Shown: positions 1,077-23,490 of the stretch, piece after piece
How the letters are laid out: every line of letters begins with the position of its first letter
Position numbering within the stretch: the stretch's first letter is position 1
NCBI RefSeq assembly: GCF_006345805.1
Contig: NW_021836504.1
Span: 1-24,647 of the forward strand
Length of the DNA: 24,647 bases
Direction of reading: 5' to 3'
Source: Octopus sinensis
Taxonomy: Eukaryota
Notes under the pieces: generated by a model
Seen by the model: the letters and a program-made list of their open reading frames with translations, nothing else
Databases searched by the model: none
What the model was told of the DNA's origin: nothing
Made by a program: the position numbers and the translations under genes

Positions 1077-1179
1077 AGGGGTGGGTAAAAGAAGGTATAC
1101 AGTTGCTTAATATGAATGGAATGTTCTTTACACTTCTCTATTCTTTTTTGGTGGGGGTGGGGGAAGAACATTCCACTCA

Positions 1180-1402
1180 TATTGGTCTTGAATTTTGACA
1201 CAAAAAGGCCAGCAATTTCAGGGAAGCGGATAAGTTGATTACATAAACCTCAGTGTTTAACTGGTAATTATGTTATTGACCCCCGTAAAGATGAAACGCA
1301 AAGTCGACCTCTGCGGAATTTGAACTCAGAACGTAGTAACAGACGAAATACCGCTAAGCATTTTGCTCAGCGTGCTAAAAGATTCCGCCAGCTCGCCGCC
1401 TT
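1180..1402 (-). mobile_element. tRNA-derived SINE, family A
   Basis: Reverse complement starts GGCGGCGAGCTGGCGGAATC (A box), has GAGTTCAAATTCCGC (B box) and a TTTCATCTTTACGGGGGTCAATAA core that resembles the Meta/MESC-type SINE domain from memory. Many homologous copies occur in the window. Confidence 0.85.
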
Positions 1403-1421
1403 AAGTAATGATAATGATAAT

Positions 1422-1583
1422 CATTTCTTTTATAGGCACAACGCCTAAAATTTGGAGGAGGGGGATAGTCGTTTATTTCGACTCCAGTACTCAACTGGTA
1501 CTAATTTATCGACTCCGAAAGGATGAAAGGTAAAGTCGACCTCGGCGGAATTTGAACTAAAAACATAGCGGCAGACGAAATAC
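1422..1583 (-). mobile_element. SINE family A, partial copy lacking the 5' head
   Basis: B box and core match the other A copies; begins at GGTATTTCGTCTG directly after the tail of the 1584-1818 copy. Confidence 0.8.
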
Positions 1584-1818
1584 CTATTTCTTTACGACCC
1601 ACAAGAGGCTAAACACAGAGAGAACAAACAAGGACAGACAAACGGATTAAGACGATTATATCGACCCCAGTGCGTAACTGGTACTTATTTAATCGACCCC
1701 GAAAGGATGAAAGGCATGGTCGACCTCGGCGGAATTTTGAACTCAGAACGTAGCGGCAGACGAAATACGGCTAAGCACTTCACCCGACGTGCTAACGATT
1801 CTGCCAGCTCGCCGCCTT
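1584..1818 (-). mobile_element. SINE family A, full length, GTGTTTAGCC..TTGTGGG tail subtype
   Basis: A box, B box, core and tail align with the 12172-12394 copy. Confidence 0.88.
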
Positions 1819-1825
1819 AATGATG

Positions 1826-1895
<70 letters not shown>
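1819..1895. repeat. (AAT)n microsatellite
   Basis: Direct reading. Confidence 0.95.
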
Positions 1896-4064: not shown

Positions 4065-4368
4065 GTGTATTTATAATTTTCACCTTAAAAGGTATTTTTC
4101 AGATGCTGACCACTGATAAAAAAATTTTAATAAAATTTTATCTTTATTTTAGAAGTATGCATGTGTGTATGTGTCTTCTATTCATGATGTGCCAAATGCG
4201 AATCCAGTTATAAATAGTAGCTCGTAATACACAGGATTGGGTGGGAAATCACCAGCGGGACTCAAAGAAATTGCTGTAACCTGGATAGTCGTGATACTAT
4301 AACACCAAAGTAACACTCCTACTCTACACTGGTTAAATTTGACTCTTTAATATTAAAATGAAAGATTA

Positions 4369-4583
4369 AAGCAGCGAGCTGGCAGAACCGTTTGCACGCT
4401 GGGCAAAATGCTTAACGGCATTTCGTCCGTCTTCACGTTCTGAGTTCAAATTCCGCCGACGTTAACATAGCCCTTCATACTCTCGGGATTGATGAAATAA
4501 GTACCAGTTAAACACGCGGTTTGTTGTAATCGACTTACCCTTCCTCTGAAATTGCTGGCCTCGTGCCAAAATTTGAAACTAAT
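4369..4583 (+). mobile_element. SINE family A
   Basis: GCAGCGAGCTGGCAGAACCG head, GAGTTCAAATTCCGCC B box, core and tail as in other copies. Confidence 0.85.
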
Positions 4584-4584
4584 A

Positions 4585-4711
4585 TTCTTTTCTATTCTAG
4601 GCACAAGACCCGAAATTTTGGGGGAGGTGGGGGCCAGTCGATTGAATCGACCTCAGTACGCAACTTAATTTATCGACCCCGAAAGGATGAAAGGCAAAGT
4701 CGAAATCGGCG
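4585..4711 (-). mobile_element. SINE family A, 3' half, tail-to-tail with the 4369-4583 copy
   Basis: ATCGACCCCGAAAGGATGAAAGGCAAAGTCGA core. Confidence 0.75.
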
Positions 4712-5513: not shown

Positions 5514-5543
<30 letters not shown>

Positions 5544-5545
<2 letters not shown>

Positions 5546-5952
5546 CTCTCTTACTCTTTACTTGTTCAGTCATTTGACTGCGGCCATGGTGGAGCACCGC
5601 CTTTAGTCAAACAAACCGACCCCGGGACTTATTCTTTGTAAGCCCAGTACTTATTCTATCGGTCTCTTTTGCCGAACCGCTAGGTGACGGGACGTAAACA
5701 CACCAGCATCGGTTGTCAAGCAATGCTAGAGGGACAAACACAGACACACAAACATATACATGCACATACATATACATATGCATATATACGACAGGCTTCT
5801 TTTCAGTTTCCGTCTACCAAATCCACTCACAAGGCTTTGGTCGACCCGAGGCTATAGTAGAAGACACTTGCCCAAGATGCCACGCAGTGGGACTGAACCC
5901 GTAACCATGTGGTCGGTTAGCAAGCTACTTACCACACAGCCACTCCTGCGCC
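5544..5952 (-). mobile_element. tRNA-derived SINE, family B, full length, CORE-like domain
   Basis: Head GGCGCAGGAGTGGCTGTGTGG, B box GGTTCAGTCCC, CORE-like TTGGGCAAGTGTCTT, internal microsatellite, stem-loop tail. Confidence 0.88.
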
Positions 5953-5970
5953 TATATATATATATTCATA

Positions 5971-6318
5971 GGCGCAGGAGTGGCTGTGTGGTAAGTAGCT
6001 TGCTAACCGACCACTTTGGGCAAGTGTCTTCTACTATAGCCTCGGGCCGACCAAAGCCATGTGAGTGGATTTGTTAGACGGAAACTGAAAGAATCCCGTC
6101 GTATATATGTATATTTTTGTGTGTCTGTGTTTATCCCCCCAATCATCGCTTGACAACCGATGCTGGTGTTTGGGTCCCCGTCACTTAGCGGTTCGGCAAA
6201 AGAGACCGATAGAATAAGTACTAGGCTTTCAAAGAATATGTTCTGGAATCGATTTCCTCGACTAAAGGCTGTGACCCAGCATGGCCATAGTCAGATGACT
6301 GAAACAAGTAAAAGAGTA
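5971..6318 (+). mobile_element. SINE family B with the B box deleted, head-to-head with 5544-5952
   Basis: Same head, CORE-like domain and tail; ~32 bp missing after GACCAC. Confidence 0.88.
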
Positions 6319-6319
6319 C

Positions 6320-6354
<35 letters not shown>

Positions 6355-8214: not shown

Positions 8215-8396
8215 TGTTGATAAGCCTAGTACTTATTCTATTAGTTTGTTCTTGTGAAACCAGTAAGTTTTGTGGGTGTAAATAAATGAACATCAGTTGT
8301 GAAGCAGTGATGAGGGCGAAACACAGACACACATACACTTACATATATACATATATATACGATTGATTTGTTTCAGTTCCTGTCTACGAAATCCAT
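8215..8396 (-). mobile_element. Degenerate SINE family B fragment
   Basis: TAAGCCTAGTACTTATTCTAT, AAACACAGACACACA and TTTCAGTTCCTGTCTACGAAATCCA match family B. Confidence 0.6.
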
Positions 8397-8401
8397 ATAT
8401 A

Positions 8402-9430
8402 TTGTTGTTGGCATCCTTTTTGTCTCGGGAGACAATGGAGTTGCGCATAAAATAATCTAGTCCGGCTTTTTCATTTCATGTCCTAATACATCTGCTGTGG
8501 CTGTGTAGTCCTATCCTGGACAAACACTCCCTCTGGCAGGTGCCGCAAATGTAGCGAAGACTTTGCCTGGCTGGTTGTAATGTCATACTTTCTTGTTGAC
8601 GTCTTTTCTTGTCTTTCTATTTCTCCTCTCCCTCTATGTCACTCGTTTGTGTTCCCTCTTTTACGGTACGTCGCCAATCTCCATGGTTGCTGGCAACTGC
8701 TTCCCAGTTGGTAATATTGATGTTGCAGGCATTCATGTCCCTTTTGCAAACATCCTTGTATCGTAAGAACGGTCTTCACACAGACCTAGCGCCTCTAGCA
8801 AGCTCTCCGTTGAGTATGTCCTTAGGGATTCTGCCATCTTCCATACGGCTAACATGTCGAAGCCATCTCATACGTCTTTGTGTGAGGAGTGTAAACATGC
8901 TTGGTATTCCTGCTTGCTTGAGGACATCTTTGTTGGGGACATGATTCTGCCATTTGATGCGAAAGATTTTCCGGAGGCAACGCAGGTGAAAGATATTTAG
9001 GCGACGTATGGCGTCGTATGACGTGTGTATAGCGTCCAAGTCTCACTTCCATACAGTAGAGTGCTAAGTACACATGCCTGGTAAATCATTTTTGTGGTCT
9101 TGGTCAGCTTATTGTTGTCCCATGCCCGTTTGGAGAGTTGGGCCATCACACCAGCTGCCTTGCCAATGCGTATATTGAGCTCAGTATCAAGGGATAGGTA
9201 GTAGGTGACGGTAGAGCCAAGATAGGTAAATTTCTCCACTTCCTGTAGTCTGTGGTCTCCAATATGTATGTTTTGGATGGTCGATGTAGCCTGACCCATG
9301 ATGTTGGTCTTCTTGAGGCTAATAACTAAGCCAAAGTTGCCACATGCTTGCTCAAAACAGTTGATGAGCCTTTGTAGGGCTTCTTCTGTGTGTGATACCA
9401 GAGTGGCATCATCAGCAAATTGCATCTCCC
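8402..9430 (-). mobile_element. 5'-truncated RTE-clade LINE (reverse transcriptase C-terminal half and 3' end), decayed
   Basis: FADD motif, FTYLGS, RIGKAA, LLYGSETWT, LNIFHLRCLRKI, RRMRWL.HV.RMEDGRIPKDIL.GEL, RYKDVCKRDM across frameshifts; 3' stem TGTCTC/GAGACA and a CAACAACAA tail. Confidence 0.93.
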
Positions 9431-9463
9431 GGCGGGCTAGCGTTTCTGCCAGCTCGCCACCTT
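9426..9463 (-). mobile_element. SINE family A head (first ~37 nt, A box) fused to the RTE 5' end
   Basis: AAGGTGGCGAGCTGGCAGAAACGCTAGCCCGCCGGG matches the family A 5' end. Confidence 0.75.
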
Positions 9464-9636
9464 TACTCAGAAAGCCAGTTTCCTTTCTGGGTAAATACTA
9501 TTCGGTAGATGTTGATATCCGCAGCTGTACCAACACTGCTGCTGGCCGTGTGAGTCAATTGCCATTCTTAGTTCTGTACCCCAACTTGGAATCCACTCCT
9601 ACTTGTATTCCTGTGAGACACGCGTATATTGATTTA

Positions 9637-10398: not shown

Positions 10399-10447
<49 letters not shown>

Positions 10448-10452
10448 ATATA

Positions 10453-10724
10453 TCACCGTGATCACCGTGACCTATATATATATAATATCACCGTGATCAC
10501 CGTGACCGACCAGACTATCAGATGTCGCTACACATCGCTGGTCACAATGCGCTTCGCATTGTTTTAGCCACTCCGCTGGCTAAGCGAGCAGGCCAACAGA
10601 AGATAGAGTGAGAGAAAGTTGTGACGAAAAAGTACAGCTTTAGGTGTTTTCGGTCAATAAACACTCACAACGCCCGGTCTGGGAACCGAGTCCGCTGCTC
10701 TAACCACTGGGCCATTGCGCCTCC
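10453..10724 (-). mobile_element. tRNA-derived SINE related to family D, different tail with ATCACGGTG repeats, internal deletions
   Basis: Head GGAGGCGCAATGGCCCAGTGGTTAGAGC; shares AGAGTGAGAGAAAGTTGTG with the 3689-3993 copy; B box missing. Confidence 0.75.
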
Positions 10725-10774
10725 ATATATAAAATGCACACACATCTCTATTTTATTTATATATTATATATATT

Positions 10775-10804
<30 letters not shown>

Positions 10805-10811
<7 letters not shown>

Positions 10812-11564
10812 AGCCGGGAACCAGCCATGCTGAATGTGGCTAGGGACATGGCGGGGTGGTGGGGGTTTACTGATGCATTTAGGCCCGGCCCCAGGCGACT
10901 ATAGACGTCACCATGTAGAGAGCCGACCCATCACGGTTTCCTTGCTAGCCTGTAAGGGAGATCAGCCTCCCCCCCGAAATACGGATGCTACACACGGACC
11001 GGTTTCGAGGTGGTCCCTCTCGTCAGCGCATGGCAAGCACCGTTCTTCGTTGAGGGACTTCCTCCACAGGCTAGAATAATATAGATTTTCACTGTAAACA
11101 CAGTCACTGGCGTCTAAAATCTGTTCGATAACAATAATAAATCTCTAAGCGAGGTATAAACAGTAACTGCTCTGTAATATAAGCGGGACCAGCCATCTGA
11201 ATGTGGCTAGGGACAGGGCGGGGTGGTGGGGGTGTTACTGATGCATTTAGTCCCAGGCGACTATAGACGTCACCAGGAGAGCCGACCATCACGGTGTCCT
11301 TGCTAGCCTGTAAAGGGAGATCAGCCTCCCCGAAGATACGGATGGTCTTCCACACGTATCTTCGGGGAGCTGATCTCCCTTTACAGGCTAGCAAGGACAC
11401 CGTGATGGTGTCGGCTCTCCTGGTGACGTCTATAGTCGCCTGGGCTAAATGCATCAGTAACACCCCCACCACCCCGCCCTGTCCCTAGCCACATTCAGAT
11501 GGCTGGTCCCGCTTATATTACAGAGCAGTTACTGTTTATACCTCGCTTAGAGATTTATTATTGT

Positions 11565-11567
<3 letters not shown>
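10805..11567 (-). mobile_element. Retrozyme-like hammerhead repeat: partial unit, one full 360-nt monomer and an inverted partial copy, inside (TA)n
   Basis: 10805-10996 is a diverged direct repeat of 11175-11356 (period 360 at the cleavage site); 11355-11567 is the reverse complement of 11128-11340; hammerhead at 10985-11040. Confidence 0.8.
10985..11040 (-). ncRNA. Type I hammerhead ribozyme with an intact canonical core; predicted cleavage between 10997 and 10996
   Basis: GUGCUUGC-CAUGCG-CUGACGA-GAGG(GACCA)CCUC-GAA-ACCGGU-C^CGUGUG-UAGCAU: all conserved core bases present, stem I 6 bp plus extension, stem II 4 bp, palindromic stem III ACCGGU, GUC triplet. Confidence 0.88.
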
Positions 11568-11595
<28 letters not shown>

Positions 11596-12011
11596 TATAA
11601 TAGATATATATATATATTATATATATATAAAATGAGATGTGTGTGTATTCGCTTTTCACGCGAAAACGGCGTCACCAGTTGCTCCCATACTTGTGATGTA
11701 TGAATAATTTGACCTCGGACATGTGTTAGACTCTCCATTTGATTTTTTTTTTATCAAAAATAAAAATTATTACTTTACATTTATGATTCACTTGTTTAAA
11801 TGTGTTTCTCAATGTCAACTTCCGGTATTGACGTAAAAACAAGCGAATTCTCTCACTCTCTATTTTAATGTTCGCTTGTTTGTAAACAACTGCGAAAGAA
11901 ATATTTACTAAATTCACAAATTTAAATATTCGGTACAAGATAGTTTTAACCGTGCTTGTATTTATACGTTTTTTTTTCCATTCTATGGTAATCTCGTTCA
12001 TTGTATGCACA

Positions 12012-12552
12012 CAATCGCCAGAAAAAACCAGAGGAATTTTCTTTCTTGGTGCTCCTGGTAGCACAGGTAAAACATTTGTAACATTGCTTCTCTGCAAGGT
12101 AAGGTAACAAAAAATTGCAGTTACTGAACCATTATCAAGGTTGATTGTGAAGGTATTATCTCCAAAAAAAAACGGCGAGCTGGCAGAAACGTTAGCACGC
12201 CGGGCGAAAGCCGTATTTCGTCTGTCGTTACGTTGTGAGTTCAAATTCCGCCGAGGTCGACTTTGCCTTTCATCCTTTCGGAGTCGATAAATTAAGTACC
12301 AGTTACGCACTAGGGTTTATATAATCGACTTAATACCTATGTCTGTCCTTGTTTGTCCCCTCTGTGTTTAGCCCCTTGTGGGTAATAAAGAAATAGGTAT
12401 TATCACCTAATGTGACAGTAGCTACTATCATTACTGGATGTGTCCCTGGGCAAGAGGTTTTCATTCCAAGAATTAAAATCAAACCAACAAATATACCATT
12501 TGAGGTACAATTTCCAGTGCGACTTTGCTTTGCAATGTCTATTAATAAAGCA
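12012..12552 (+). pseudogene. Helitron RepHel PIF1-type helicase remnant, internally deleted and SINE-interrupted
   Basis: GIFFLGAPGSTGKTF (Walker A; Helitron FFLDAPGGTGKTF), then RLIVKVLSP / VLSPNVTVATIITGCVPGQEVFIPRI..PFEVQFPVRLCFAMSINKA (Helitron QFPVRL.FAMSINKAQGQ). Confidence 0.88.
12172..12394 (+). mobile_element. SINE family A inserted in the Helitron remnant with a 13-bp TSD
   Basis: TSD AGGTATTATCTCC (12151-12163) and AGGTATTATCACC (12395-12407); helicase homology resumes after the insert. Confidence 0.9.
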
Positions 12553-12661: not shown

Positions 12662-12881
12662 GTATTGGATTCAAATTCCTGCACAAGGCCAGAAATTTAA
12701 GAAAGGTGTTCAAGTCGATTACATCGATTCCAGTGTTCAACTGGTACTTACTTTATCAACCCGGAAAGTGATGAAAGGTAAAATCAACCTCGGCGGAATT
12801 TGAACTCCGAACGCAAAGGCAGATGAAAAGCTGCTAAGCATTTTGCGCGGCGTGCTAACGATTCTGCCAGCGAGCTGCCTT
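12662..12881 (-). mobile_element. SINE family A
   Basis: Head, B box and core match other copies. Confidence 0.85.
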
Positions 12882-12895
12882 ATTGCACCGTATAG

Positions 12896-13065
12896 ATATT
12901 GGTTTCAAATTTTGGCACAAGGCCAGCAAGTTCGGAGGTGGGGGGGGGGAAGTCGTTTACGGTGACCTCGTTATTCAACTAGTACTTATTTTATCAACCC
13001 TGAATTTGATGAAAGGCAAAGTCAACCTCTGCGGAATTTGAACTCGTCTGCCAGCAAACTGCCTT
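12896..13065 (-). mobile_element. SINE family A with an internal head deletion
   Basis: Core and B box present; sequence between B box and A box missing (AACTC|GTCTGCC). Confidence 0.8.
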
Positions 13066-14160: not shown

Positions 14161-14178
14161 TATATATGAATGTATACA

Positions 14179-14248
<70 letters not shown>

Positions 14249-14256
14249 CACACACC

Positions 14257-14306
<50 letters not shown>

Positions 14307-14839: not shown

Positions 14840-14860
14840 ATATATATGTATATGTATATA

Positions 14861-15493
14861 TGATATGTATGTATGTATGTACCTTTGTATGTATAAATAA
14901 TATGATATATCTAGTTTTGTACTGATGTTTGAATTTTTCGAAATCCCTTATCTCTCTTCCCTTTTCCCTTCTCCTCTCTATCTCTCTCTCTCTCTTAATC
15001 AATCTGTCTATCTATCCATCTATCAACTTATATATAAAAATATCCCATAAACATTGCCTCGCTCTCTTTCATTTATTCGATCACTAACTCCTCACATATT
15101 CAATCGATCATTCGATAAATCACTTAAATATTATTTTGCTTTTGCTTATGTGTATTGAAGTGAGTGTATATGCTTGTGTGTTTGCATAGAGATATTGCTA
15201 ACTTCCATATGTTACATATGTACACACGTACGGGTTGGCATAGGCGCGAATATATGTGTATGGGAATCTCTCTATGTGAGAATATGTGTGTGTATATATA
15301 CAGGCATGTATATGTGTTTGAAAACATTCGTTAATGAGTATGCATAAATATTACATACGCACATACATAAATGTTCGTAATTAAGCCTAAATTTTGTATG
15401 GAGATTTACTATACAAGCAGCGGTACATACATCCATCCATACATACATACACTCAAATATACACACATACATATATATATCTATATCTATATC

Positions 15494-15532
<39 letters not shown>

Positions 15533-15534
15533 TA

Positions 15535-15580
<46 letters not shown>

Positions 15581-16389
15581 CATACACCCATACGTTCACA
15601 TATGTTTGTGTGTGAGTCTGTGTAAATGACCAGATAAGAAGAGAAGAAATGAGAGAGAGAATAGAGATTTATTCCATTGTTGACAGCTGTTTCGTAATCT
15701 GTTAGTTACATAAGCAACGCTACACCATCCGTCATATATATATATATATGTTATTGATGTATGTAGTACCTTGTATTATAAACTAATATGATATATCTAG
15801 TTTTGTACTGATGTTTGAACTTTTTCGAAATCCCTTATCTCTCTTCCTCTTTTTCCCTTCCTCCTCTCTCCTCTCTCTCTCTCTTAATCAATCTGTCTAT
15901 CTATCCATCTATCAACTTATATATAAAAATATCCCATATAAACATTGCCTCGCTCTCTTTCATTTATTCGATCACTAACTCCTCACATATTCAATCGATC
16001 ATTCGATAAATCACTTAAATATTATTTTGCTTTTGCTTATGTGTATTGAAGTTGAGTGTATATGCTTGTGTGTTTGCATAGAGATATTGCTAACTTCCAT
16101 ATGTACATATGTACACACGTACGGGTTGGCATAGGCGCGAATATATGTGTATGTATGAATCTCTCTATGTGAGAATATGTGTGTGTATATATACAGGCAT
16201 GTATATGTGTTTGAAAACATTCGTTAATGAGTATGCATAAATATACATACGCACATACATAAATGTTCGTAATTAAGCCTAAATTTTGTATGGAGATTTA
16301 CTTATACAAGCAGCGGTATATACATCCATCTATACATACATACACTCAAATATACACATACATACATATATACATCTATATCTACTATA

Positions 16390-16469
<80 letters not shown>

Positions 16470-16640
16470 TATATACATACCACATACGTTCACATATGTT
16501 TGTGTGTGAGTCTGTGTAAACTGACCAGATAAGAGAAGAGAAATGAGAGAATAGAGATTTATTCCATTAGTTGACAGCTGTTTCGTAATCTGTTAGTTAC
16601 ATAAGCAACGCTACACCATCCGTCATATATATATATATAT
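14861..16640. repeat. Tandem duplication of ~886 bp (about 14861-15748 and 15755-16640)
   Basis: TATGATATATCTAGTTTTGTACTG at 14901 and 15787; both copies end CTACACCATCCGTCATATAT; differences are mostly small indels. Confidence 0.92.
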
Positions 16641-16651
16641 TGAATATACAT

Positions 16652-16771
16652 GCTTACGGCCATATCATGTTGAAAGCACCGGTTCTAGTTTGATCACCGA
16701 AGTTAAGCAACATTGAGCCTAGTTAGTACTTAGATGGGTGACCGCTTGGAAAGCCCAAGTACTGTAAGCAT
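16652..16771 (+). rRNA. 5S rRNA-derived sequence, full length (120 nt), probably a pseudogene or SINE head
   Basis: GCTTACGGCCATATCATGTTGAAAGCACCGG...GATCACCGAAGTTAAGC...AGTTAGTACTTAGATGGGTGACCGC...GTACTGTAAGCAT; boxes A and C present; several CpG-type changes disturb stems. Confidence 0.9.
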
Positions 16772-16847: not shown

Positions 16848-18082
16848 TACCAGGTTGAGACAAATGTTTTTTTCGTGTTTCAATCTTTATTTAATAGTTC
16901 AAACAAATTACGAAGAGCGTTTATTTATCAAAATTTATCCAATCATATTCCGTTGTCTGTTGCCATCGTTATGTCTGAAGCTAAATTTCTCGCTTATACC
17001 ATTTGCCTGGTTCAGAAGCAAAAGAAACCCCTGCACCGGTTTGCAACCTTACTCACTTTGTCGAACCTCCGGCTGTGAAGGGGATGAGCCGTGGCCCAGA
17101 AAAAGTAGAAATCTGATGGTACAAGGTCTGGATTATAGGCAAGGTAAGGCAGCGCTTCCATCCCTTCAAGTTCCTCAAGTTTGCGCTGGGTGACATTGAT
17201 GGTCTGTGGTGTGGGGAAGGGGCGTTGTCATATTGTAATAATGCACATCTTTGATTGACCATTGACGAGTAGCTTTCAAAGCATCATATACTCGCTGAAG
17301 TTATTGGGCATAAAGGTTAGCGCTCAGAACATGCACATCTGGGACAAGTTCAAAGTGCAACGCCACCTCGAAATTACACCAAATCACATAACATAACATT
17401 CTGTTCAAACTGCCCGGAACTAAGCTATTGATTTTTCTTATTTGGATAATGAAAATAAATGAAGTTTTCATCCCCTGTTATAGTTCGACGCCAATGACGG
17501 GCATCTCAAGGATTTGCCAGCAGCTGTTTGTAAATGTTCATACGTCGTTGAGCCTGGTCATGAAGGGCTTCTCAACAACGTCTATTCACAAGGTTGAGCT
17601 TTTGGAGGTGTCTATTGATGGTGCTTTGTAAAGGACCAAGTTCTGTCGACCATGTACGAGTGCTTGTGCTTGGCTCAACCATTTCAAACAAGGCCACATC
17701 TTCTACATCAGAAGGTCTCCCTCGCCTTGGATTGCCTTTGAGGATCGCATCACTTTCCTAGAAACGTCTGAACTAGTTTTATGCTACACATTTGTTAACA
17801 GTTCCTAGGCCTTTTACATCATTTATTTCTTTTGCCACTGCCATCAATTCTTCCTTTTCCACATGTAGCGTAAAATGGCTCTAATTGCAATTATTTCACC
17901 ACTCATTATCAAAGCTTTAAAATTAAGAATAACCAATAAATGTTTATATGTTATATATGAAAACAACGTATCAACAATCCAGGAATCATTGCACAACAAT
18001 GAAATCAGTGATATAACATGGAAGTACTAGTTGCCAAAAATCATCAGTGAAAATCCGAAAAAACTTTTGACTCACCCTGGTA
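16848..18082 (-). mobile_element. Full-length (~1.24 kb) decayed mariner DNA transposon
   Basis: TIRs TACCAGGTTGAGACAAATGTTT and AAACTTTTGACTCACCCTGGTA (3 mismatches), flanked by TA. Confidence 0.92.
16921..17906 (-). pseudogene. Mariner transposase pseudogene
   Basis: MSGEIIAIRAILRY.., RRGRPSDV, ITGDENFIY, LLQYDNAP, YNPDLVPSDF (mariner TGDEKW, HDNARPH, YSPDLAPSD); many stops and frameshifts. Confidence 0.9.
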
Positions 18083-18365
18083 TATGCACACCCCATATAT
18101 ATAATTGTGATGTAACACAAAGAACTGACTACACTTTCGGACTTTCCATGTCAAGTTAAGACACTAGACTCTACTGTATAGCAAAGAGTTTCATCATATA
18201 GTCACAGACAATAGATGTATTCGGCAGATTCCACTCCTTACAAATACTAGAATTATCTTATATGAATTGCATTAATGAAGTGATAACAGTGGATGAATAC
18301 AAATTCTGGTAAAAAGGTAAATACAATAAAATAAATAAAATAAAGGTTAAAACATTATATTTACT

Positions 18366-18574
18366 ATCTTTTTACTTGTTTCAGTCATTTGACTATGGCC
18401 ATGCCGGAGCAACGCCTTTAGTCGAGCAAATCAACACCATGACTTATTCTTTGTAAGCCTAGAACTTATTCTATCGGTCTCTTTTGCCGAACCGCTAAGT
18501 TACGGGGACGTAAACACACCAACATCGGTTGTCAAGCGATGCTGGTGGGGGGGACAAACAACGCACACACATTA

Positions 18575-18629
<55 letters not shown>

Positions 18630-18828
18630 ATATATTATATATATATATACATATATACGACGGACTTCTTTCATGTTCCGTCGTATATATATATATATAA
18701 CATATATACGACGGACTTCTTTCAGTTTCCGTCTACCAAATCCACTCACAAGGTTATAGTAGAAGACACCTGCCCAAGGTGCCACGCAGAACCATGTGAT
18801 TGGTAAGCAAGCTACTTACCACACAGCC
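18366..18828 (-). mobile_element. SINE family B with internal deletions and a small inversion-duplication
   Basis: Tail, body and head match family B. Confidence 0.88.
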
Positions 18829-19063
18829 TGAAAACTATTTTAGAATATTTTTTCAATGAGTGCTTGATGAAACATATTAAATTTGATTTTTCCACAAAAT
18901 ATACTTGCAAAATACAGTATTCCCAAAAATTTCGTTCATCGTACCGTAGTATGTAAAGGAATAAACCATATGATGCAAAAATAGAGAATAAGATAACGAT
19001 AAATGAATGAATAAATAGAAAAAATACATAGAGAAGAAAAAGTATGGAGAAAAGGAAGAGAAA

Positions 19064-19279
19064 TGGCTCTGTGGTAAGTAAGTAGCTTGCTTACCAAACA
19101 CATTGTTCTGGGTTCAGTCCCATTGCGTGGCACCTTGGCAAGTGTCTTCTAGTATAGCCTCGGACCGACCAAAGCTTTGTGAGTGGATTTGGTAGACGGA
19201 AACTGAAAGAAGCCCGTCGTATATATGTATGTATGTGTGTGAATATATAATATATATATATATATATATATAATATATA

Positions 19280-19311
<32 letters not shown>

Positions 19312-19324
19312 TGTGTGTGTGTGG

Positions 19325-19357
<33 letters not shown>

Positions 19358-19580
19358 CATGTATGTATGTATGTATGTATGTATGTATGTATGTATGTAT
19401 GTATGTGTGTATATATTTGTGTGTCTGTGTTTGTCCCCCAACATCGCTTGACAACCGGGCTGGTGTGTTTACGTCCCCGTAACTAGGCTTACAAAGAATA
19501 AGTCCTGGAGTCGATGTCTTCGACTAAATGCGGTGCTCCAGCATAGCTACAGTCAAATGACTGAAACAAGTAAAAGAGTA
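19064..19580 (+). mobile_element. SINE family B with an expanded internal microsatellite
   Basis: Head with B box GGTTCAGTCCC, CORE-like domain, tail CAGTCAAATGACTGAAACAAGTAAAAGAG. Confidence 0.88.
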
Positions 19581-19677
19581 AAAAAAGTATGAATAAACAG
19601 GGTTTTGAATATCGAGATAGGAGACTGTGTATGTAAAGGCAATGCATATGTTTTTGGAAAGAGAGATACTTAGTTAC

Positions 19678-20991: not shown

Positions 20992-21104
20992 TTATTAGTA
21001 AAATAGTTGTGACTACAAAATGAAGTCGGTTTGGCGTAGACCAATGTAGAGCTATAGAATGTGACCCTAATACATTTTGTTTTTCTTTTTTCTTTTTTTC
21101 AAGT

Positions 21105-21378
21105 CTGATACTCATTCTGACGGTCTTTTTTTGCCAAACTGCCTGGCTACGTGGACGTAAACAAACCAAGGTTATCAAGCGGTGGTGGGGCCAAACACAG
21201 AGACACAGTATGACAACCGGTGTTGGTTTGTTTCCGTCTGCCAAAATCCACTCACAAGGCTTTGGTCGATCTGGGGCTATTGTAGAAGATATTTGCCCAT
21301 GGTGTCAATCACTGGGGCTAAACCCACAACCATGTGGTTGGGAAGCAAACTTCTTACCACACACCCACGACAGCGCCT
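21105..21378 (-). mobile_element. Old, diverged SINE family B copy
   Basis: AAATCCACTCACAAGGCTTTGGTCG and AACCATGTGGTTGGGAAGCAAACTTCTTACCAC. Confidence 0.75.
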
Positions 21379-21511
21379 AATTCTTTTTTTTTTCTTTTTT
21401 TTTTTTCTTTTGCTGCTCTTATAGTGTAAAAGGCAAAATGTCAGACTGTGGCAGGCAGTCATTCAGAGAAACTGGCGGACATACTGACAGTGAAACACTC
21501 TTAATACTTAC

Positions 21512-23278: not shown

Positions 23279-23349
23279 ATCACTACCTGGAATCGAACTC
23301 GGAATCTTGGGGTTAGTAGCCCACGCTCTTAACCACTACACCATATGCC
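23276..23349 (-). mobile_element. tRNA-like SINE head followed by (AAT)n; not called as a functional tRNA
   Basis: GGCATATGGTGTAGTGGTTAAGAGCGTGGGCTACTAACCCCAAGATTCCGAGTTCGATTCCAGGTAGTGATCTG: A and B boxes, anticodon-like and T-like stems, but no paired acceptor stem. Confidence 0.7.
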
Positions 23350-23490
23350 TTGTGGGTGGATTTGATAGACAGAAACTGAAAGAAGCCCGTGATATATATA
23401 ATTATATATGTGTGTGCGTGTGTGTGTGTGTGCTTGTGTGTGTGTGGCCCCAACAGCGCTTGACAACCGATGCTAGTAGATTTTACGTGT
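23347..23490 (+). mobile_element. SINE family B internal fragment
   Basis: GCCTTGTGGGTGGATTTGATAGACAGAAACTGAAAGAAGCCCGT and CTTGACAACCGATGCT. Confidence 0.75.

What the first reader, a model, noticed from the sequence alone, without database searches (positions are those of the whole stretch)
10997..11356. A 360-nt hammerhead-bearing monomer: candidate cephalopod retrozyme and circular RNA
Seen: an intact type I hammerhead (minus strand, CUGACGA..GAAA..GUC) lies in a non-coding, relatively GC-rich repeat with a 360-nt period. 11356->10997 runs exactly from one predicted cleavage product 5' end to the next cleavage base. Circularising it lengthens stem I (CUUGCCAUGCG/CGUGUGGAAG, 10 bp, one bulge). 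Distal parts are complementary (11066-11074 with 11303-11311; 11041-11049 with 11331-11340). Known: metazoan non-LTR retrozymes are tandem non-coding monomers of a few hundred nt with one type I hammerhead each and yield circRNAs. Inference: this is such an element, integrated at more than unit length. I do not know whether it has been described in octopus.
Basis: partly seen in the sequence, partly recalled or inferred. Interest (0 to 1): 0.92.

Follow-up and report, generated by a model that had tools for sequence, protein, structure and literature searches.

The report
Hammerhead retrozyme-like insertion, one dead-end copy
A real self-cleaving hammerhead ribozyme sits in a 360-base non-coding repeat whose layout is that of a Penelope-type retrotransposon insertion, so it is a new example of a known kind of element, and this copy cannot make a circular RNA because it has only one ribozyme.

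Summary
A canonical type I hammerhead lies on the minus strand (core 11026->10997, cleavage between 10997 and 10996). No dinucleotide shuffle of the window gave a motif as good (0/1000). A covariance model built from four experimentally validated retrozyme hammerheads finds it as the only significant hit (20 bits, E~6e-4). Rfam's own models miss it.

The 360-nt unit folds into a strongly paired circle (z = -3.75), with helix I extended to about 44 bp.

The locus holds one full unit, a 182-nt second partial unit at 87% identity, and a 213-nt inverted copy. That inverted copy is joined exactly at the predicted cleavage site. Both ends abut (TA)n, and the two 3' ends lie 47 nt apart.

This matches the published signature of Penelope-like element insertions: partial tandem, inverted 5'-truncated copy, one-sided tail and an AT-rich target. 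No RT or GIY-YIG coding sequence is present.

Best reading: a non-autonomous, Penelope-mobilised, retrozyme-type RNA inserted at more than unit length. With a single dimer-dependent ribozyme, this copy is a dead end.

Copy number, circles and the octopus origin could not be tested. It is a new member of a known kind.

The parts
10733..10753 (+). Left outer flank, one arm of a 21-nt inverted repeat (AATGCACACACATCTCTATTT) lying outside the (TA)n tracts. Origin unexplained.
   Evidence: GAGATGTGTGTG occurs exactly only here and at 11634-11645. Only 1 of 16 other (TA)n tracts in the window has inverted flanks.
10754..10811 (.). (TA)n microsatellite abutting the 3' end of the direct copies. Presumed half of the AT-rich target.
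   Evidence: (TRF).
10805..10996 (-). Partial unit 2, equal to unit positions 1-182. It is 87% identical to unit 1 (5 substitutions, 9 indels) and ends in TATATTA, which merges into (TA)n.
   Evidence: (D4-D7).
10991..11032 (-). Type I hammerhead ribozyme. Helix I is 6 bp (CAUGCG/CGUGUG). The core is CUGACGA. Helix II is GAGG/CCUC with loop GACCA, followed by GAAA. Helix III is the palindrome A-CCGG-U with no loop, and position 17 is C. The scissile bond lies between 10997 and 10996.
   Evidence: 0/1000 shuffles as good; a model built from validated retrozyme hammerheads scores 20.0 bits, E~6e-4, and it is the only significant hit. Rfam gives no hit.
10997..11356 (-). Unit 1, the 360-nt hammerhead-delimited monomer. 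Position 1 is C11356 and position 360 is C10997.
   Evidence: circular MFE -118.3 kcal/mol, z = -3.75, 65% paired.
11027..11074 (-). Unit positions 283-330, the 5' strand of the extended helix I. It pairs with unit positions 1-54 (window 11356-11303) over 44 bp.
11128..11174 (-). Unit positions 183-229, a 47-nt AT-rich 'tail' segment (GC 32%). In the terminal copies it is present at the inverted-copy end (about 11521-11567) and absent from the unit-2 end.
   Evidence: Compared with the Penelope-like element tail described in PMC8557442 and PMC11167929.
11341..11354 (.). 14-nt spacer at the centre of the palindrome (unit positions 3-16). The CG at 11355-11356 is shared by both arms as microhomology.
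   Evidence: (I6). The sub-threshold miRNA-family Rfam hits at 11304-11390 are this hairpin.
11355..11567 (+). Inverted 5'-truncated copy, equal to unit positions 17-229 on the opposite strand. It differs from unit 1 by 0 substitutions and 3 indels, and is joined to unit 1 exactly at the predicted cleavage-product 5' end.
   Evidence: (I1, I6, I16).
11565..11629 (.). (TA)n microsatellite abutting the 3' end of the inverted copy. Presumed other half of the target.
11630..11649 (+). Right outer flank, the second arm of the flank inverted repeat (AAATGAGATGTGTGTGTATT).

Best explanation
The locus 10805-11567 is one retro-insertion of a short, non-coding, hammerhead-bearing RNA with a 360-nt period. 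That makes it a non-LTR retrozyme-type element, in other words a non-autonomous derivative mobilised by a Penelope-like element (PLE). It was made by PLE-type machinery acting in trans.

Shown by the sequence:
- A canonical type I hammerhead.
- A 360-nt unit followed by 182 nt of a second unit.
- An inverted copy of unit positions 17-229 joined head-to-head at the ribozyme's scissile bond through a CG microhomology.
- Both outer ends embedded in (TA)n.
- Two different 3' termini, at unit positions 182 and 229.
- No coding sequence.

Inferred mechanism:
1. Source arrays elsewhere in the genome are transcribed as oligomers.
2. Hammerheads of neighbouring units pair through the palindromic helix III (ACCGGU) and cut after GUC. 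This gives 360-nt monomers whose ends are held together by a ~44-bp extension of helix I. Such monomers are good substrates for a tRNA ligase (RtcB-type), which would make circles.
3. A PLE endonuclease cuts an AT-rich target, and its RT starts internally in the RNA, near position 182 or 229.
4. The RT copies through one uncut or religated hammerhead junction and runs off at a hammerhead-cleaved 5' end.
5. The inverted copy arises either by snap-back self-priming of the cDNA 3' end or by a second target-primed reaction on the other DNA strand.

This particular copy keeps one dimer-dependent ribozyme. It is therefore a dead-end 'monomer derivative' and not a source of circRNA.
For: Ribozyme:
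- All core positions are present, with G10.1-C11.1 and helices of 6, 4 and 2 bp.
- 0 of 1000 shuffles give as good a motif.
- A covariance model built only from coral, mussel and axolotl retrozyme hammerheads with mapped cleavage sites (sequences, alignment, model) gives one significant hit, 11032->10991, 20 bits, E~6e-4, with all 13 pairs standard. The next best hit scores 9.6 bits.
- Helix III (A-CCGG-U) has the same form as in axolotl Ax330 (A-CAUG-U). The axolotl ribozymes cleave weakly within monomeric repeats and much better in dimeric constructs.

Short periodic template:
- The direct repeat has 358-368 nt spacing.
- No protein similarity in any of the six frames, and no Pfam hit.

RNA structure:
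- Circular MFE -118.3 kcal/mol, z = -3.75, with 44 bp between positions 1-54 and 283-330.

PLE-type insertion signature, as described in PMC8557442 and PMC11167929:
- Partial tandem.
- Inverted 5'-truncated copy adjacent to the 5' end.
- A tail present at one end only (here 47 nt).
- An AT-rich / (TA)n target.
- Both DNA strands cut and extended, with two internal RT start sites.
All of these are seen here.

Junction:
- The plus strand reads ...GGTCTTCCACA[CG]TATCTTCGGGG..., as expected if a cDNA ending at the complement of the cleaved 5' end primed on a CG.

Literature context:
- Non-LTR retrozymes of 350-390 bp exist in a mollusc, the mussel.
- Retrozymes are argued to be PLE derivatives.
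- Octopus genomes carry recently active Penelope families.
Against: - Only one locus is available. No other copy, array or transcript could be retrieved, so 'family' and 'mobile' are inferences.
- Only one hammerhead instance exists, so there is no covariation within the element.
- Rfam's hammerhead models give no hit even at E <= 10 on an 86-nt stretch.
- GC is 50.6%, at or above the upper bound (<45-50%) quoted for metazoan retrozymes.
- The tail is 47 nt, not 30-40 nt.
- The palindrome arms differ only by indels. That also fits a long-read assembly artefact or gene conversion.
- The outer flanks beyond (TA)n are themselves an inverted repeat. The simple insertion model does not explain this.
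- In vitro, hammerhead cleavage was not needed for PLE insertion, and no reads ending at the cleavage site were found in Anolis.
Confidence: 0.68

Rival explanations
1. The locus is a remnant of an autonomous Penelope-like element: a solo or internally deleted pseudo-LTR, not a member of a separate short non-autonomous family.
For: - Hammerheads are typical of PLE pseudo-LTRs, and most PLE insertions are 5'-truncated with a single terminal repeat.
- The insertion architecture here is PLE-like in every respect.
- Retrozymes and pLTRs are sequence relatives in Xenopus, so the boundary between the two is soft.
Against: - The direct repeat recurs at 360 nt, so the template had a 360-nt period and not 3-4 kb.
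- The 178 nt between the repeats shows no RT or endonuclease similarity in any frame.
- No PLE ORF occurs anywhere in the 24.6-kb window. The only RT fragment (9000-9497, minus strand) has a C-terminal RVT_1 match and a FADD motif that I read as LINE-type from my own knowledge. It is separated from the unit by a SINE-like sequence.
- The ribozyme has the canonical 6/4-bp helices of retrozyme hammerheads. It lacks the long helix II, short helix I and extra nucleotide after A9 described for metazoan PLE min-hammerheads.
Confidence: 0.12
2. The repeat architecture is not an RNA-mediated more-than-unit insertion. It would be the product of DNA-level events at a fragile (TA)n palindrome (fold-back inverted duplication plus deletion, or tandem duplication), or partly an assembly artefact, around a single hammerhead-bearing sequence.
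For: - The arms of the 213-215-nt palindrome differ by indels only, with 0 substitutions. That is the pattern expected from long-read errors or a very recent DNA event.
- The inverted repeat extends beyond the element into the outer flanks (10733-10753 with 11630-11649). This is unusual for (TA)n tracts in this window, seen at 1 of 16 others.
- PMC8557442 notes that such complex structures cause assembly problems.
Against: - Both the palindrome axis and the upstream end of the direct repeat fall within 2 nt of the predicted scissile bond. That is about a 1-2% coincidence for a random breakpoint in 360 nt, and this estimate was made after seeing the data.
- The right arm is not a simple mirror of the left arm. 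It lacks 313 nt, so a second event would be needed.
- The whole pattern matches a published insertion signature point by point.
Confidence: 0.14
3. The hammerhead-like motif is a chance match with no catalytic activity, and the repeat is an ordinary low-copy segmental feature.
For: - Rfam's curated hammerhead models do not report it at any threshold tried.
- There is only one instance, so no covariation supports it.
- A monomer with a 2-bp, loop-less helix III is not expected to cleave on its own.
Against: - 0 of 1000 shuffles give as good a motif, and 5 of 1000 give any relaxed hit.
- An independent model from validated ribozymes gives E~6e-4, about 10 bits above the next hit.
- Helix I is prolonged by 44 bp of pairing with the sequence that starts exactly at the cleavage site.
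- The repeat boundary coincides with the scissile bond.
Confidence: 0.05

Closest known systems
Metazoan non-LTR retrozymes, in particular the Mytilus galloprovincialis 350-390-bp retrozyme (clone Mg353) of Cervera & de la Pena 2020 (PMC7229834)
   Same: - The host is a mollusc, if the window is indeed cephalopod.
- The non-coding unit has nearly the same size (360 vs 353 nt).
- It carries one type I hammerhead with a 6-bp helix I, a 4-bp helix II with a 5-nt loop, and a palindromic helix III.
- The predicted circle is highly self-paired (65% vs 71% paired).
   Different: - There is no sequence similarity outside the catalytic core.
- GC is 51% against 37%.
- Here there are only 1.5 units and one ribozyme instead of tandem arrays.
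- Helix III is shorter (ACCGGU vs ACGCGCGU).
- Expression and circularity are unknown here.
Axolotl retrozyme Ax330 hammerhead / newt satellite-2 type (dimer-dependent type I hammerheads)
   Same: Helix III has the same form, a 4-nt palindrome between A15.1 and U16.1 (CAUG vs CCGG) with no loop. This predicts weak activity as a monomer and efficient cleavage only when two ribozymes pair.
   Different: - The sequence is unrelated.
- The host is a vertebrate with around 10^5 copies in long arrays.
- Here a single copy is seen.
Penelope-like element insertions (pLTR architecture; Craig et al. 2021 PMC8557442; Frangieh et al. 2024 PMC11167929)
   Same: - Partial tandem.
- Inverted 5'-truncated copy at the 5' end.
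- Extension ('tail') at one end only.
- (TA)n / AT-rich target.
- A hammerhead upstream of the internal 3' termini.
   Different: - No RT/GIY-YIG ORF.
- The period is 360 nt instead of 3-4 kb.
- The tail is 47 nt, not 30-40 nt.
- The ribozyme has the canonical type I form, not the PLE min-hammerhead form.
- Here the 5' end coincides with the hammerhead cleavage site, which was not observed for the Anolis element.
Plant LTR retrozymes (Cervera et al. 2016, PMC4918200)
   Same: A non-autonomous, non-coding retroelement whose hammerheads delimit a unit proposed to circularise.
   Different: Plant elements have type III hammerheads inside true LTRs, a primer-binding site (PBS), a polypurine tract (PPT), 4-bp target duplications and a presumed Gypsy partner. 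None of these is seen here.

Membership tests
Hammerhead ribozyme, type I (canonical metazoan form) | Conserved core C3-U4-G5-A6-N7-G8-A9, G12-A13-A14, the A15.1-U16.1 pair and H17, with a G10.1-C11.1 pair | tested here: met
   CUGACGA / GAAA / U-C^ with G10.1-C11.1 (GAGG...CCUC)..
Hammerhead ribozyme, type I (canonical metazoan form) | Three helices in type I topology: open helix I of about 6 bp, helix II of about 4 bp, and a short helix III with a small palindromic loop | tested here: met
   Helix I is 6 bp (10 bp in the circular or tandem context), helix II is 4 bp with a 5-nt loop, and helix III is A-CCGG-U.. This matches the description in PMC4209133.
Hammerhead ribozyme, type I (canonical metazoan form) | Match to Rfam hammerhead covariance models at the gathering score | tested here: not met
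   No hammerhead family is reported at the gathering score, at E <= 10 on 1.2 kb or at E <= 10 on 86 nt. I could not test whether Rfam recognises the validated loop-less helix III ribozymes, because only the window and fetched loci can be scanned.
Hammerhead ribozyme, type I (canonical metazoan form) | Match to a model built from ribozymes with experimentally mapped cleavage | tested here: met
   Model R1 (coral, mussel and two axolotl ribozymes) scores 20.0 bits, E~6e-4, full length, with 13 of 13 standard pairs. It is the single significant hit in 24.6 kb on both strands. E-values from the shortened calibration are rough.
Hammerhead ribozyme, type I (canonical metazoan form) | Self-cleavage at the predicted site | not testable with these tools
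   This needs in vitro transcription of monomer and dimer constructs.
Metazoan non-LTR retrozyme | Short non-coding unit (about 170-400 nt) carrying one type I hammerhead | tested here: met
   The unit is 360 nt. There are no homologues for any of the six frames and no Pfam hit.
Metazoan non-LTR retrozyme | Head-to-tail tandem repeats, so that two hammerheads flank a unit (dimers to multimers) | tested here: not met
   At this locus there are 1.5 units and one hammerhead. Upstream of 11356 lies an inverted copy, not a ribozyme. It would count as a 'monomer derivative' in the sense of the 2026 preprint.
Metazoan non-LTR retrozyme | Multi-copy family in the genome | not testable with these tools
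   There are no other copies in the window. None of the collections searched for other copies can be expected to hold this genome, and the protein-database routes found nothing.
Metazoan non-LTR retrozyme | Predicted circRNA is highly self-paired | tested here: met
   Circular MFE is -118.3 kcal/mol against -97.4 +/- 5.6 for shuffles, z = -3.75, 65% paired.
Metazoan non-LTR retrozyme | Low GC content (<45-50%) | tested here: inconclusive
   Unit GC is 50.6% (positions 1-182: 56%; the remainder: 32-62%), against 37.9% for the window. This is at the upper limit quoted in PMC7229834.
Metazoan non-LTR retrozyme | Expressed as linear and circular RNA of unit length | not testable with these tools
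   No transcriptome is available.
Penelope-like element (autonomous) | Single ORF encoding a telomerase-like RT plus a GIY-YIG endonuclease | tested here: not met
   No such ORF is found in or next to the element or anywhere in the window. The only RT fragment has a C-terminal RVT_1 match with a FADD motif, which I read as LINE-type, and it lies 1.3 kb away.
Penelope-type insertion architecture | Partial tandem (pLTR-like direct repeat), an inverted 5'-truncated copy at the 5' end, a tail at one end, and an AT-rich/(TA)n target | tested here: met
   The direct repeat covers positions 1-182. The inverted copy covers positions 17-229. The 47-nt extra segment (183-229) is present only at the inverted-copy end. 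(TA)n lies on both sides. Compared.

The most novel reading that the evidence does not exclude
Both the head-to-head junction of the inverted copy and the upstream end of the direct repeat lie exactly at the hammerhead's scissile bond, and the two 3' termini lie 47 nt apart inside the unit. If this is not coincidence, the locus is a genomic footprint showing two things. First, a hammerhead-cleaved RNA (5'-OH end) was the in vivo template for Penelope-type reverse transcription. Second, that transcription used two internal start sites and priming on both DNA strands or snap-back. This would be the first direct evidence that ribozyme processing defines insertion ends in the retrozyme/PLE life cycle. 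The role of the hammerhead in endonuclease-containing PLEs is still called unclear in the literature, and no cephalopod case is described in the papers I could search.
Probability: 0.3. Interest if true: 0.6.

Novelty: new member of a known kind. Interest (0 to 1): 0.4.

Why it matters
Hammerhead retrozymes are known from cnidarians, mussels, insects, amphibians and other animals. A 2026 preprint argues, for vertebrates only, that they derive from Penelope-like elements. In the literature I could search, no paper links hammerhead ribozymes or retrozymes to cephalopods, although octopus genomes carry recently active Penelope families.

If the source genome proves to hold arrays of this unit, the consequences would be:
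- The retrozyme-PLE partnership would extend to an invertebrate lineage that the preprint did not sample.
- A 360-nt ribozyme-made circRNA would be predicted in an animal famous for RNA-level complexity.

Independently of that, the anatomy of this one insertion carries mechanistic information that can be tested genome-wide. Its 5' end lies at the scissile bond, its inverted copy is joined by a CG microhomology, and its two internal 3' ends lie 47 nt apart. The question is whether retrozyme or PLE insertions generally end at the hammerhead cut.

As it stands, this is one dead-end copy of a known kind of element, so it is interesting but not surprising.

Tried and rejected
1. Rfam. Gathering threshold on the whole window, E <= 10 on 1.2 kb and on 86 nt gave no hammerhead family. 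The only hits were sub-threshold miRNA-family matches, caused by the palindrome centre, and noise. I do not treat this as refuting the ribozyme, because a model built from validated retrozyme hammerheads does find it. It is still recorded as a failed membership test.

2. Finding other copies through spurious ORFs in the protein database. The 122-aa ORF and a six-frame concatenation of the unit gave no hits. Exact-product look-ups for four window ORFs found nothing on record. These negatives are uninformative, because the window's genome does not seem to be represented.

3. DNA pattern scans. A degenerate hammerhead pattern in metagenome contigs, and a 24-mer shared by all three copies in metagenome, prokaryotic-genome and viral collections, gave 0 matches, as expected for collections without animal genomes.

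4. Verifying the taxon. The LINE RT fragment gives only ~67% matches to assorted aquatic animals. Searches of papers for the hammerhead sequence and for the abundant SINE consensus found nothing.

5. Homology to the mussel retrozyme Mg353. No similarity above shuffled controls.

6. A general tendency of (TA)n tracts in this window to have inverted flanks, which might have explained the flank palindrome. Rejected: 1 of 16.

7. RNAcofold of two junction segments to display the dimeric hammerhead. The MFE was a trivial strand swap and says nothing. The dimer argument rests on ACCGGU being self-complementary and on the axolotl precedent.

8. MAFFT alignment of my hammerhead with the four validated ones misaligned the 3' half, so no pair-count table was made.

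9. One literature search was badly designed and returned irrelevant papers.
Full report
**1. What is there**

Read on the minus strand, the region contains, from 5' to 3':
- a (TA)n tract (11629-11565);
- an inverted partial copy of the element (11567-11355);
- a 14-nt spacer;
- a full 360-nt unit (11356->10997);
- 182 unit positions of a second unit (10996->10805);
- a second (TA)n tract (10811-10754).

A BLAST of the unit against the window finds only these three copies. The repeat finder reports the same picture. Direct blocks D4-D7 are spaced 358-368 nt apart. Inverted pairs I1, I16 and I6 together make a palindrome with arms of about 215 nt at 96-100% complementarity.

Pairwise alignment shows two things:
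- The inverted copy equals unit positions 17-229, with no substitutions and three small indels.
- The second direct copy equals positions 1-182, with five substitutions and nine indels (87% identity).

**2. The ribozyme**

The sequence is CAUGCG-CUGACGA-GAGG(GACCA)CCUC-GAAA-CCGG-UC^CGUGUG. It carries every conserved hammerhead core position, the G10.1-C11.1 pair, a 6-bp open helix I, a 4-bp helix II, and a helix III made only of A15.1-U16.1 and C-G around 'CG'. In other words, helix III is the self-complementary hexamer ACCGGU. The scissile bond lies between C10997 and C10996.

Three tests bear on whether it is real:
- A descriptor scan finds this one motif in the window. Five of 1000 dinucleotide shuffles give any relaxed hit, and none gives one as good.
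- Rfam does not report it at any threshold.
- I took the four retrozyme constructs with mapped cleavage sites from Supplementary Table 2 of Cervera & de la Pena 2020 (coral Amil224, mussel Mg353, axolotl Ax353 and Ax330). I aligned their hammerheads, built a covariance model with the three helices and searched the window with filters off.

That model gave a single significant hit, 11032->10991 on the minus strand. It scores 20.0 bits with E about 6e-4 (rough calibration), is full length, and has all 13 pairs standard. The next hit scores 9.6 bits.

The motif has the 'canonical metazoan type I' form described in PMC4209133: helix I 6 bp, helix II 4 bp, helix III 1-2 bp with a small palindromic loop. 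It does not have the PLE min-hammerhead form, which has a long helix II, a short helix I and an extra nucleotide after A9. Its helix III has the same form as that of axolotl Ax330 (A-CAUG-U). The axolotl ribozymes cleave weakly within monomeric repeats and much better in dimeric constructs.

**3. The RNA**

The 360-nt unit has 50.6% GC, against 37.9% for the window. Its circular MFE is -118.3 kcal/mol, against -97.4 +/- 5.6 for shuffles (z = -3.75), with 65% of bases paired.

They are parts of one feature: unit positions 1-54, which start at the base after the cut, pair with positions 283-330, which end at the base before CUGA. This gives 44 bp and prolongs helix I. [quoted passage not shown] This is the geometry expected for ligation by a tRNA ligase (RtcB-type), as shown for other retrozymes. 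Here it is inference.

**4. Coding content and neighbours**

A 122-aa ORF crosses the palindrome, but it has no homologues. The same is true of a concatenation of all six frames of the unit, and Pfam finds nothing.

The window contains no PLE-type RT or GIY-YIG sequence. The only RT remnant (9000-9497, minus strand) is a C-terminal RVT_1 piece with a FADD motif, which I read as LINE-type from my own knowledge. Its best matches are about 67% identical to RT-domain proteins of assorted animals. It is separated from the element by a tRNA-like SINE head.

It is not met at this locus. The direct repeat recurs after 360 nt, so the template RNA had a 360-nt period.

**5. How the insertion was made**

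The layout matches the published signature of Penelope-like element insertions point by point. Craig et al. [quoted passage not shown] Frangieh et al. 2024 show in vitro that a PLE protein cuts and extends both strands of AT-rich DNA. They also show that reverse transcription starts at two adjacent internal sites, and that the sequence between those sites is the tail.

Here:
- The direct copies end at unit position 182 (TATATTA merging into (TA)n).
- The inverted copy ends at position 229 (GTTAT merging into (TA)n).
- The 47 nt in between are therefore present at one end only.

At the other end, the plus strand reads ...GGTCTTCCACA[CG]TATCTTCGGGG.... This is what is expected if a cDNA that ended at the complement of unit position 1 paired its terminal CG with a CG 14 nt further in on the same cDNA (snap-back), or with the end of a second cDNA made on the other strand. 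It would then have been extended.

Both models explain the junction. The zero substitutions between the arms are automatic under snap-back. They also follow if both reactions copied the same unit of one RNA.

The important point is that the upstream limit of the direct repeat and the palindrome junction fall, within the 2-nt microhomology, on the predicted scissile bond. For a random breakpoint in a 360-nt unit, that is roughly a 1-2% coincidence. This estimate was made after seeing the data.

The template was therefore more than one unit long, cut by a hammerhead at its 5' end, and uncut (or religated, or joined by template jumping) at the internal junction. The 13% difference between the two direct units fits either a heterogeneous source array or a jump between two different monomers. 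Heterogeneous retrozyme RNA populations are reported in mussel.

**6. What this copy can do**

Very little. It has one hammerhead of the dimer-dependent type, and no second cleavage site upstream. A transcript across the locus could be cut at most once and cannot release a 360-nt monomer. [quoted passage not shown] If transcribed, its 440-nt near-perfect hairpin would make long dsRNA.

**7. What remains unexplained or untested**

- The 21 nt outside the two (TA)n tracts are also an inverted repeat (10733-10753 with 11630-11649). This is not a general property of (TA)n tracts in the window (1 of 16). Two explanations remain open. Either the element landed in the centre of a pre-existing AT-rich palindrome, or a DNA-level fold-back event contributed to the structure.
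- An assembly artefact cannot be excluded for the palindrome, because its arms differ only by indels.
- No other copy of the element could be retrieved from any collection at hand. Family size, arrays, association with PLEs, transcription and circularity are therefore all open.
- The cephalopod origin of the window could not be verified.

**8. Comparison with what is known, and verdict**

The element works like a metazoan non-LTR retrozyme, and it was inserted like a Penelope-like element. As a member of the retrozyme family it fails one defining feature at this locus (tandem units, each with a ribozyme), and several others could not be tested. It is not an autonomous PLE. It shows no sequence similarity to the mussel retrozyme, as expected, because these elements are species-specific.

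In the literature I could search, hammerheads and retrozymes are not described in cephalopods. Octopus vulgaris is reported to have 30 recently active Penelope families.

I rate the finding as a new member of a known kind, with interest 0.4. The most novel reading not excluded by my evidence is that the junction is a footprint of hammerhead processing during PLE-type retrotransposition. I give it a probability of about 0.3.

Noticed in passing
window 16652-16770 (+), with 14846-16640 upstream: There is a full-length 5S rRNA match (94.2 bits, gathering score 38), followed by a TTTT run about 10 nt downstream. Immediately upstream is a 0.9-kb tandem duplication (14846-15749 vs 15734-16640, 94.7% identity) that does not itself contain a second 5S gene. 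Whether this is a real 5S gene or the head of a 5S-derived SINE was not examined.
   Followed up: partly
window 1179-1840, 4365-4711, 12150-12401, 12663-13045: At least seven copies, on both strands and 72-87% identical, of a ~200-nt SINE-like repeat. Its consensus ends ...GGCGGAATTTGAACTCAGAACG...GTGCTAACGATTCTGCCAGCTCGCCGCCTT, followed by AT-rich or trinucleotide tails. One copy lies about 600 nt upstream of the hammerhead element. The family occurs without the hammerhead unit elsewhere, so it is independent of it.
   Followed up: partly
window 5538-6320, 8217-8395, 18356-18830, 19064-19581, 21093-21379, 23347-23488: A second dispersed repeat family, 70-91% identical and found in both orientations, regularly sits next to (TA)n or (TATG)n microsatellites. 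Not classified.
   Followed up: no
window 10560-10730 (-): A tRNA-like sequence (GGAGGCGCAATGGCCCAGTGGTTAGAGCAGCGGACTCGGTTCCCAGACCGGGCG...) begins about 20 nt beyond the left flank of the insertion. ARAGORN calls no tRNA. It looks like the head of a tRNA-derived SINE. It has no other copy in the window.
   Followed up: partly
window 8779-9497 (-): A frameshifted remnant of a reverse transcriptase. It has a C-terminal RVT_1 match (E 3.5e-8) and a FADD motif that I read as LINE-type. Its best database matches are about 67% identical to RT-domain proteins from fish, gastropod, tubeworm, crab and sea cucumber. It is not attached to the hammerhead unit.
   Followed up: yes
window 17015-17760 (-): Open frames with motifs that resemble a mariner/Tc1 transposase C-terminus (...YNPDLVPSDFYFF...). 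Pfam gave no significant hit, so this rests on my reading only.
   Followed up: partly
window 11304-11390, both strands: Rfam miRNA families (mir-1684 at 46.6 bits, mir-584, mir-4864 and others) match the centre of the palindrome below their gathering scores. They reflect the perfect hairpin, not a miRNA gene, but the 440-nt hairpin would be a dsRNA source if transcribed.
   Followed up: yes
window 10437-10507 and 18636-18733: Two short tandem duplications are embedded in (TA)n tracts. One is a 35-nt unit with ATATCACCGTGATCACCGTGACC repeated exactly. The other is a 51-nt unit present in 1.9 copies.
   Followed up: no
window 14176-14302: (AC)n is directly followed by (AT)n, and the flanks form an inverted repeat (score 16). 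This is the only other (TA)n tract in the window with palindromic flanks, and there it is explained by low-complexity (AC)n/(GT)n sequence.
   Followed up: partly
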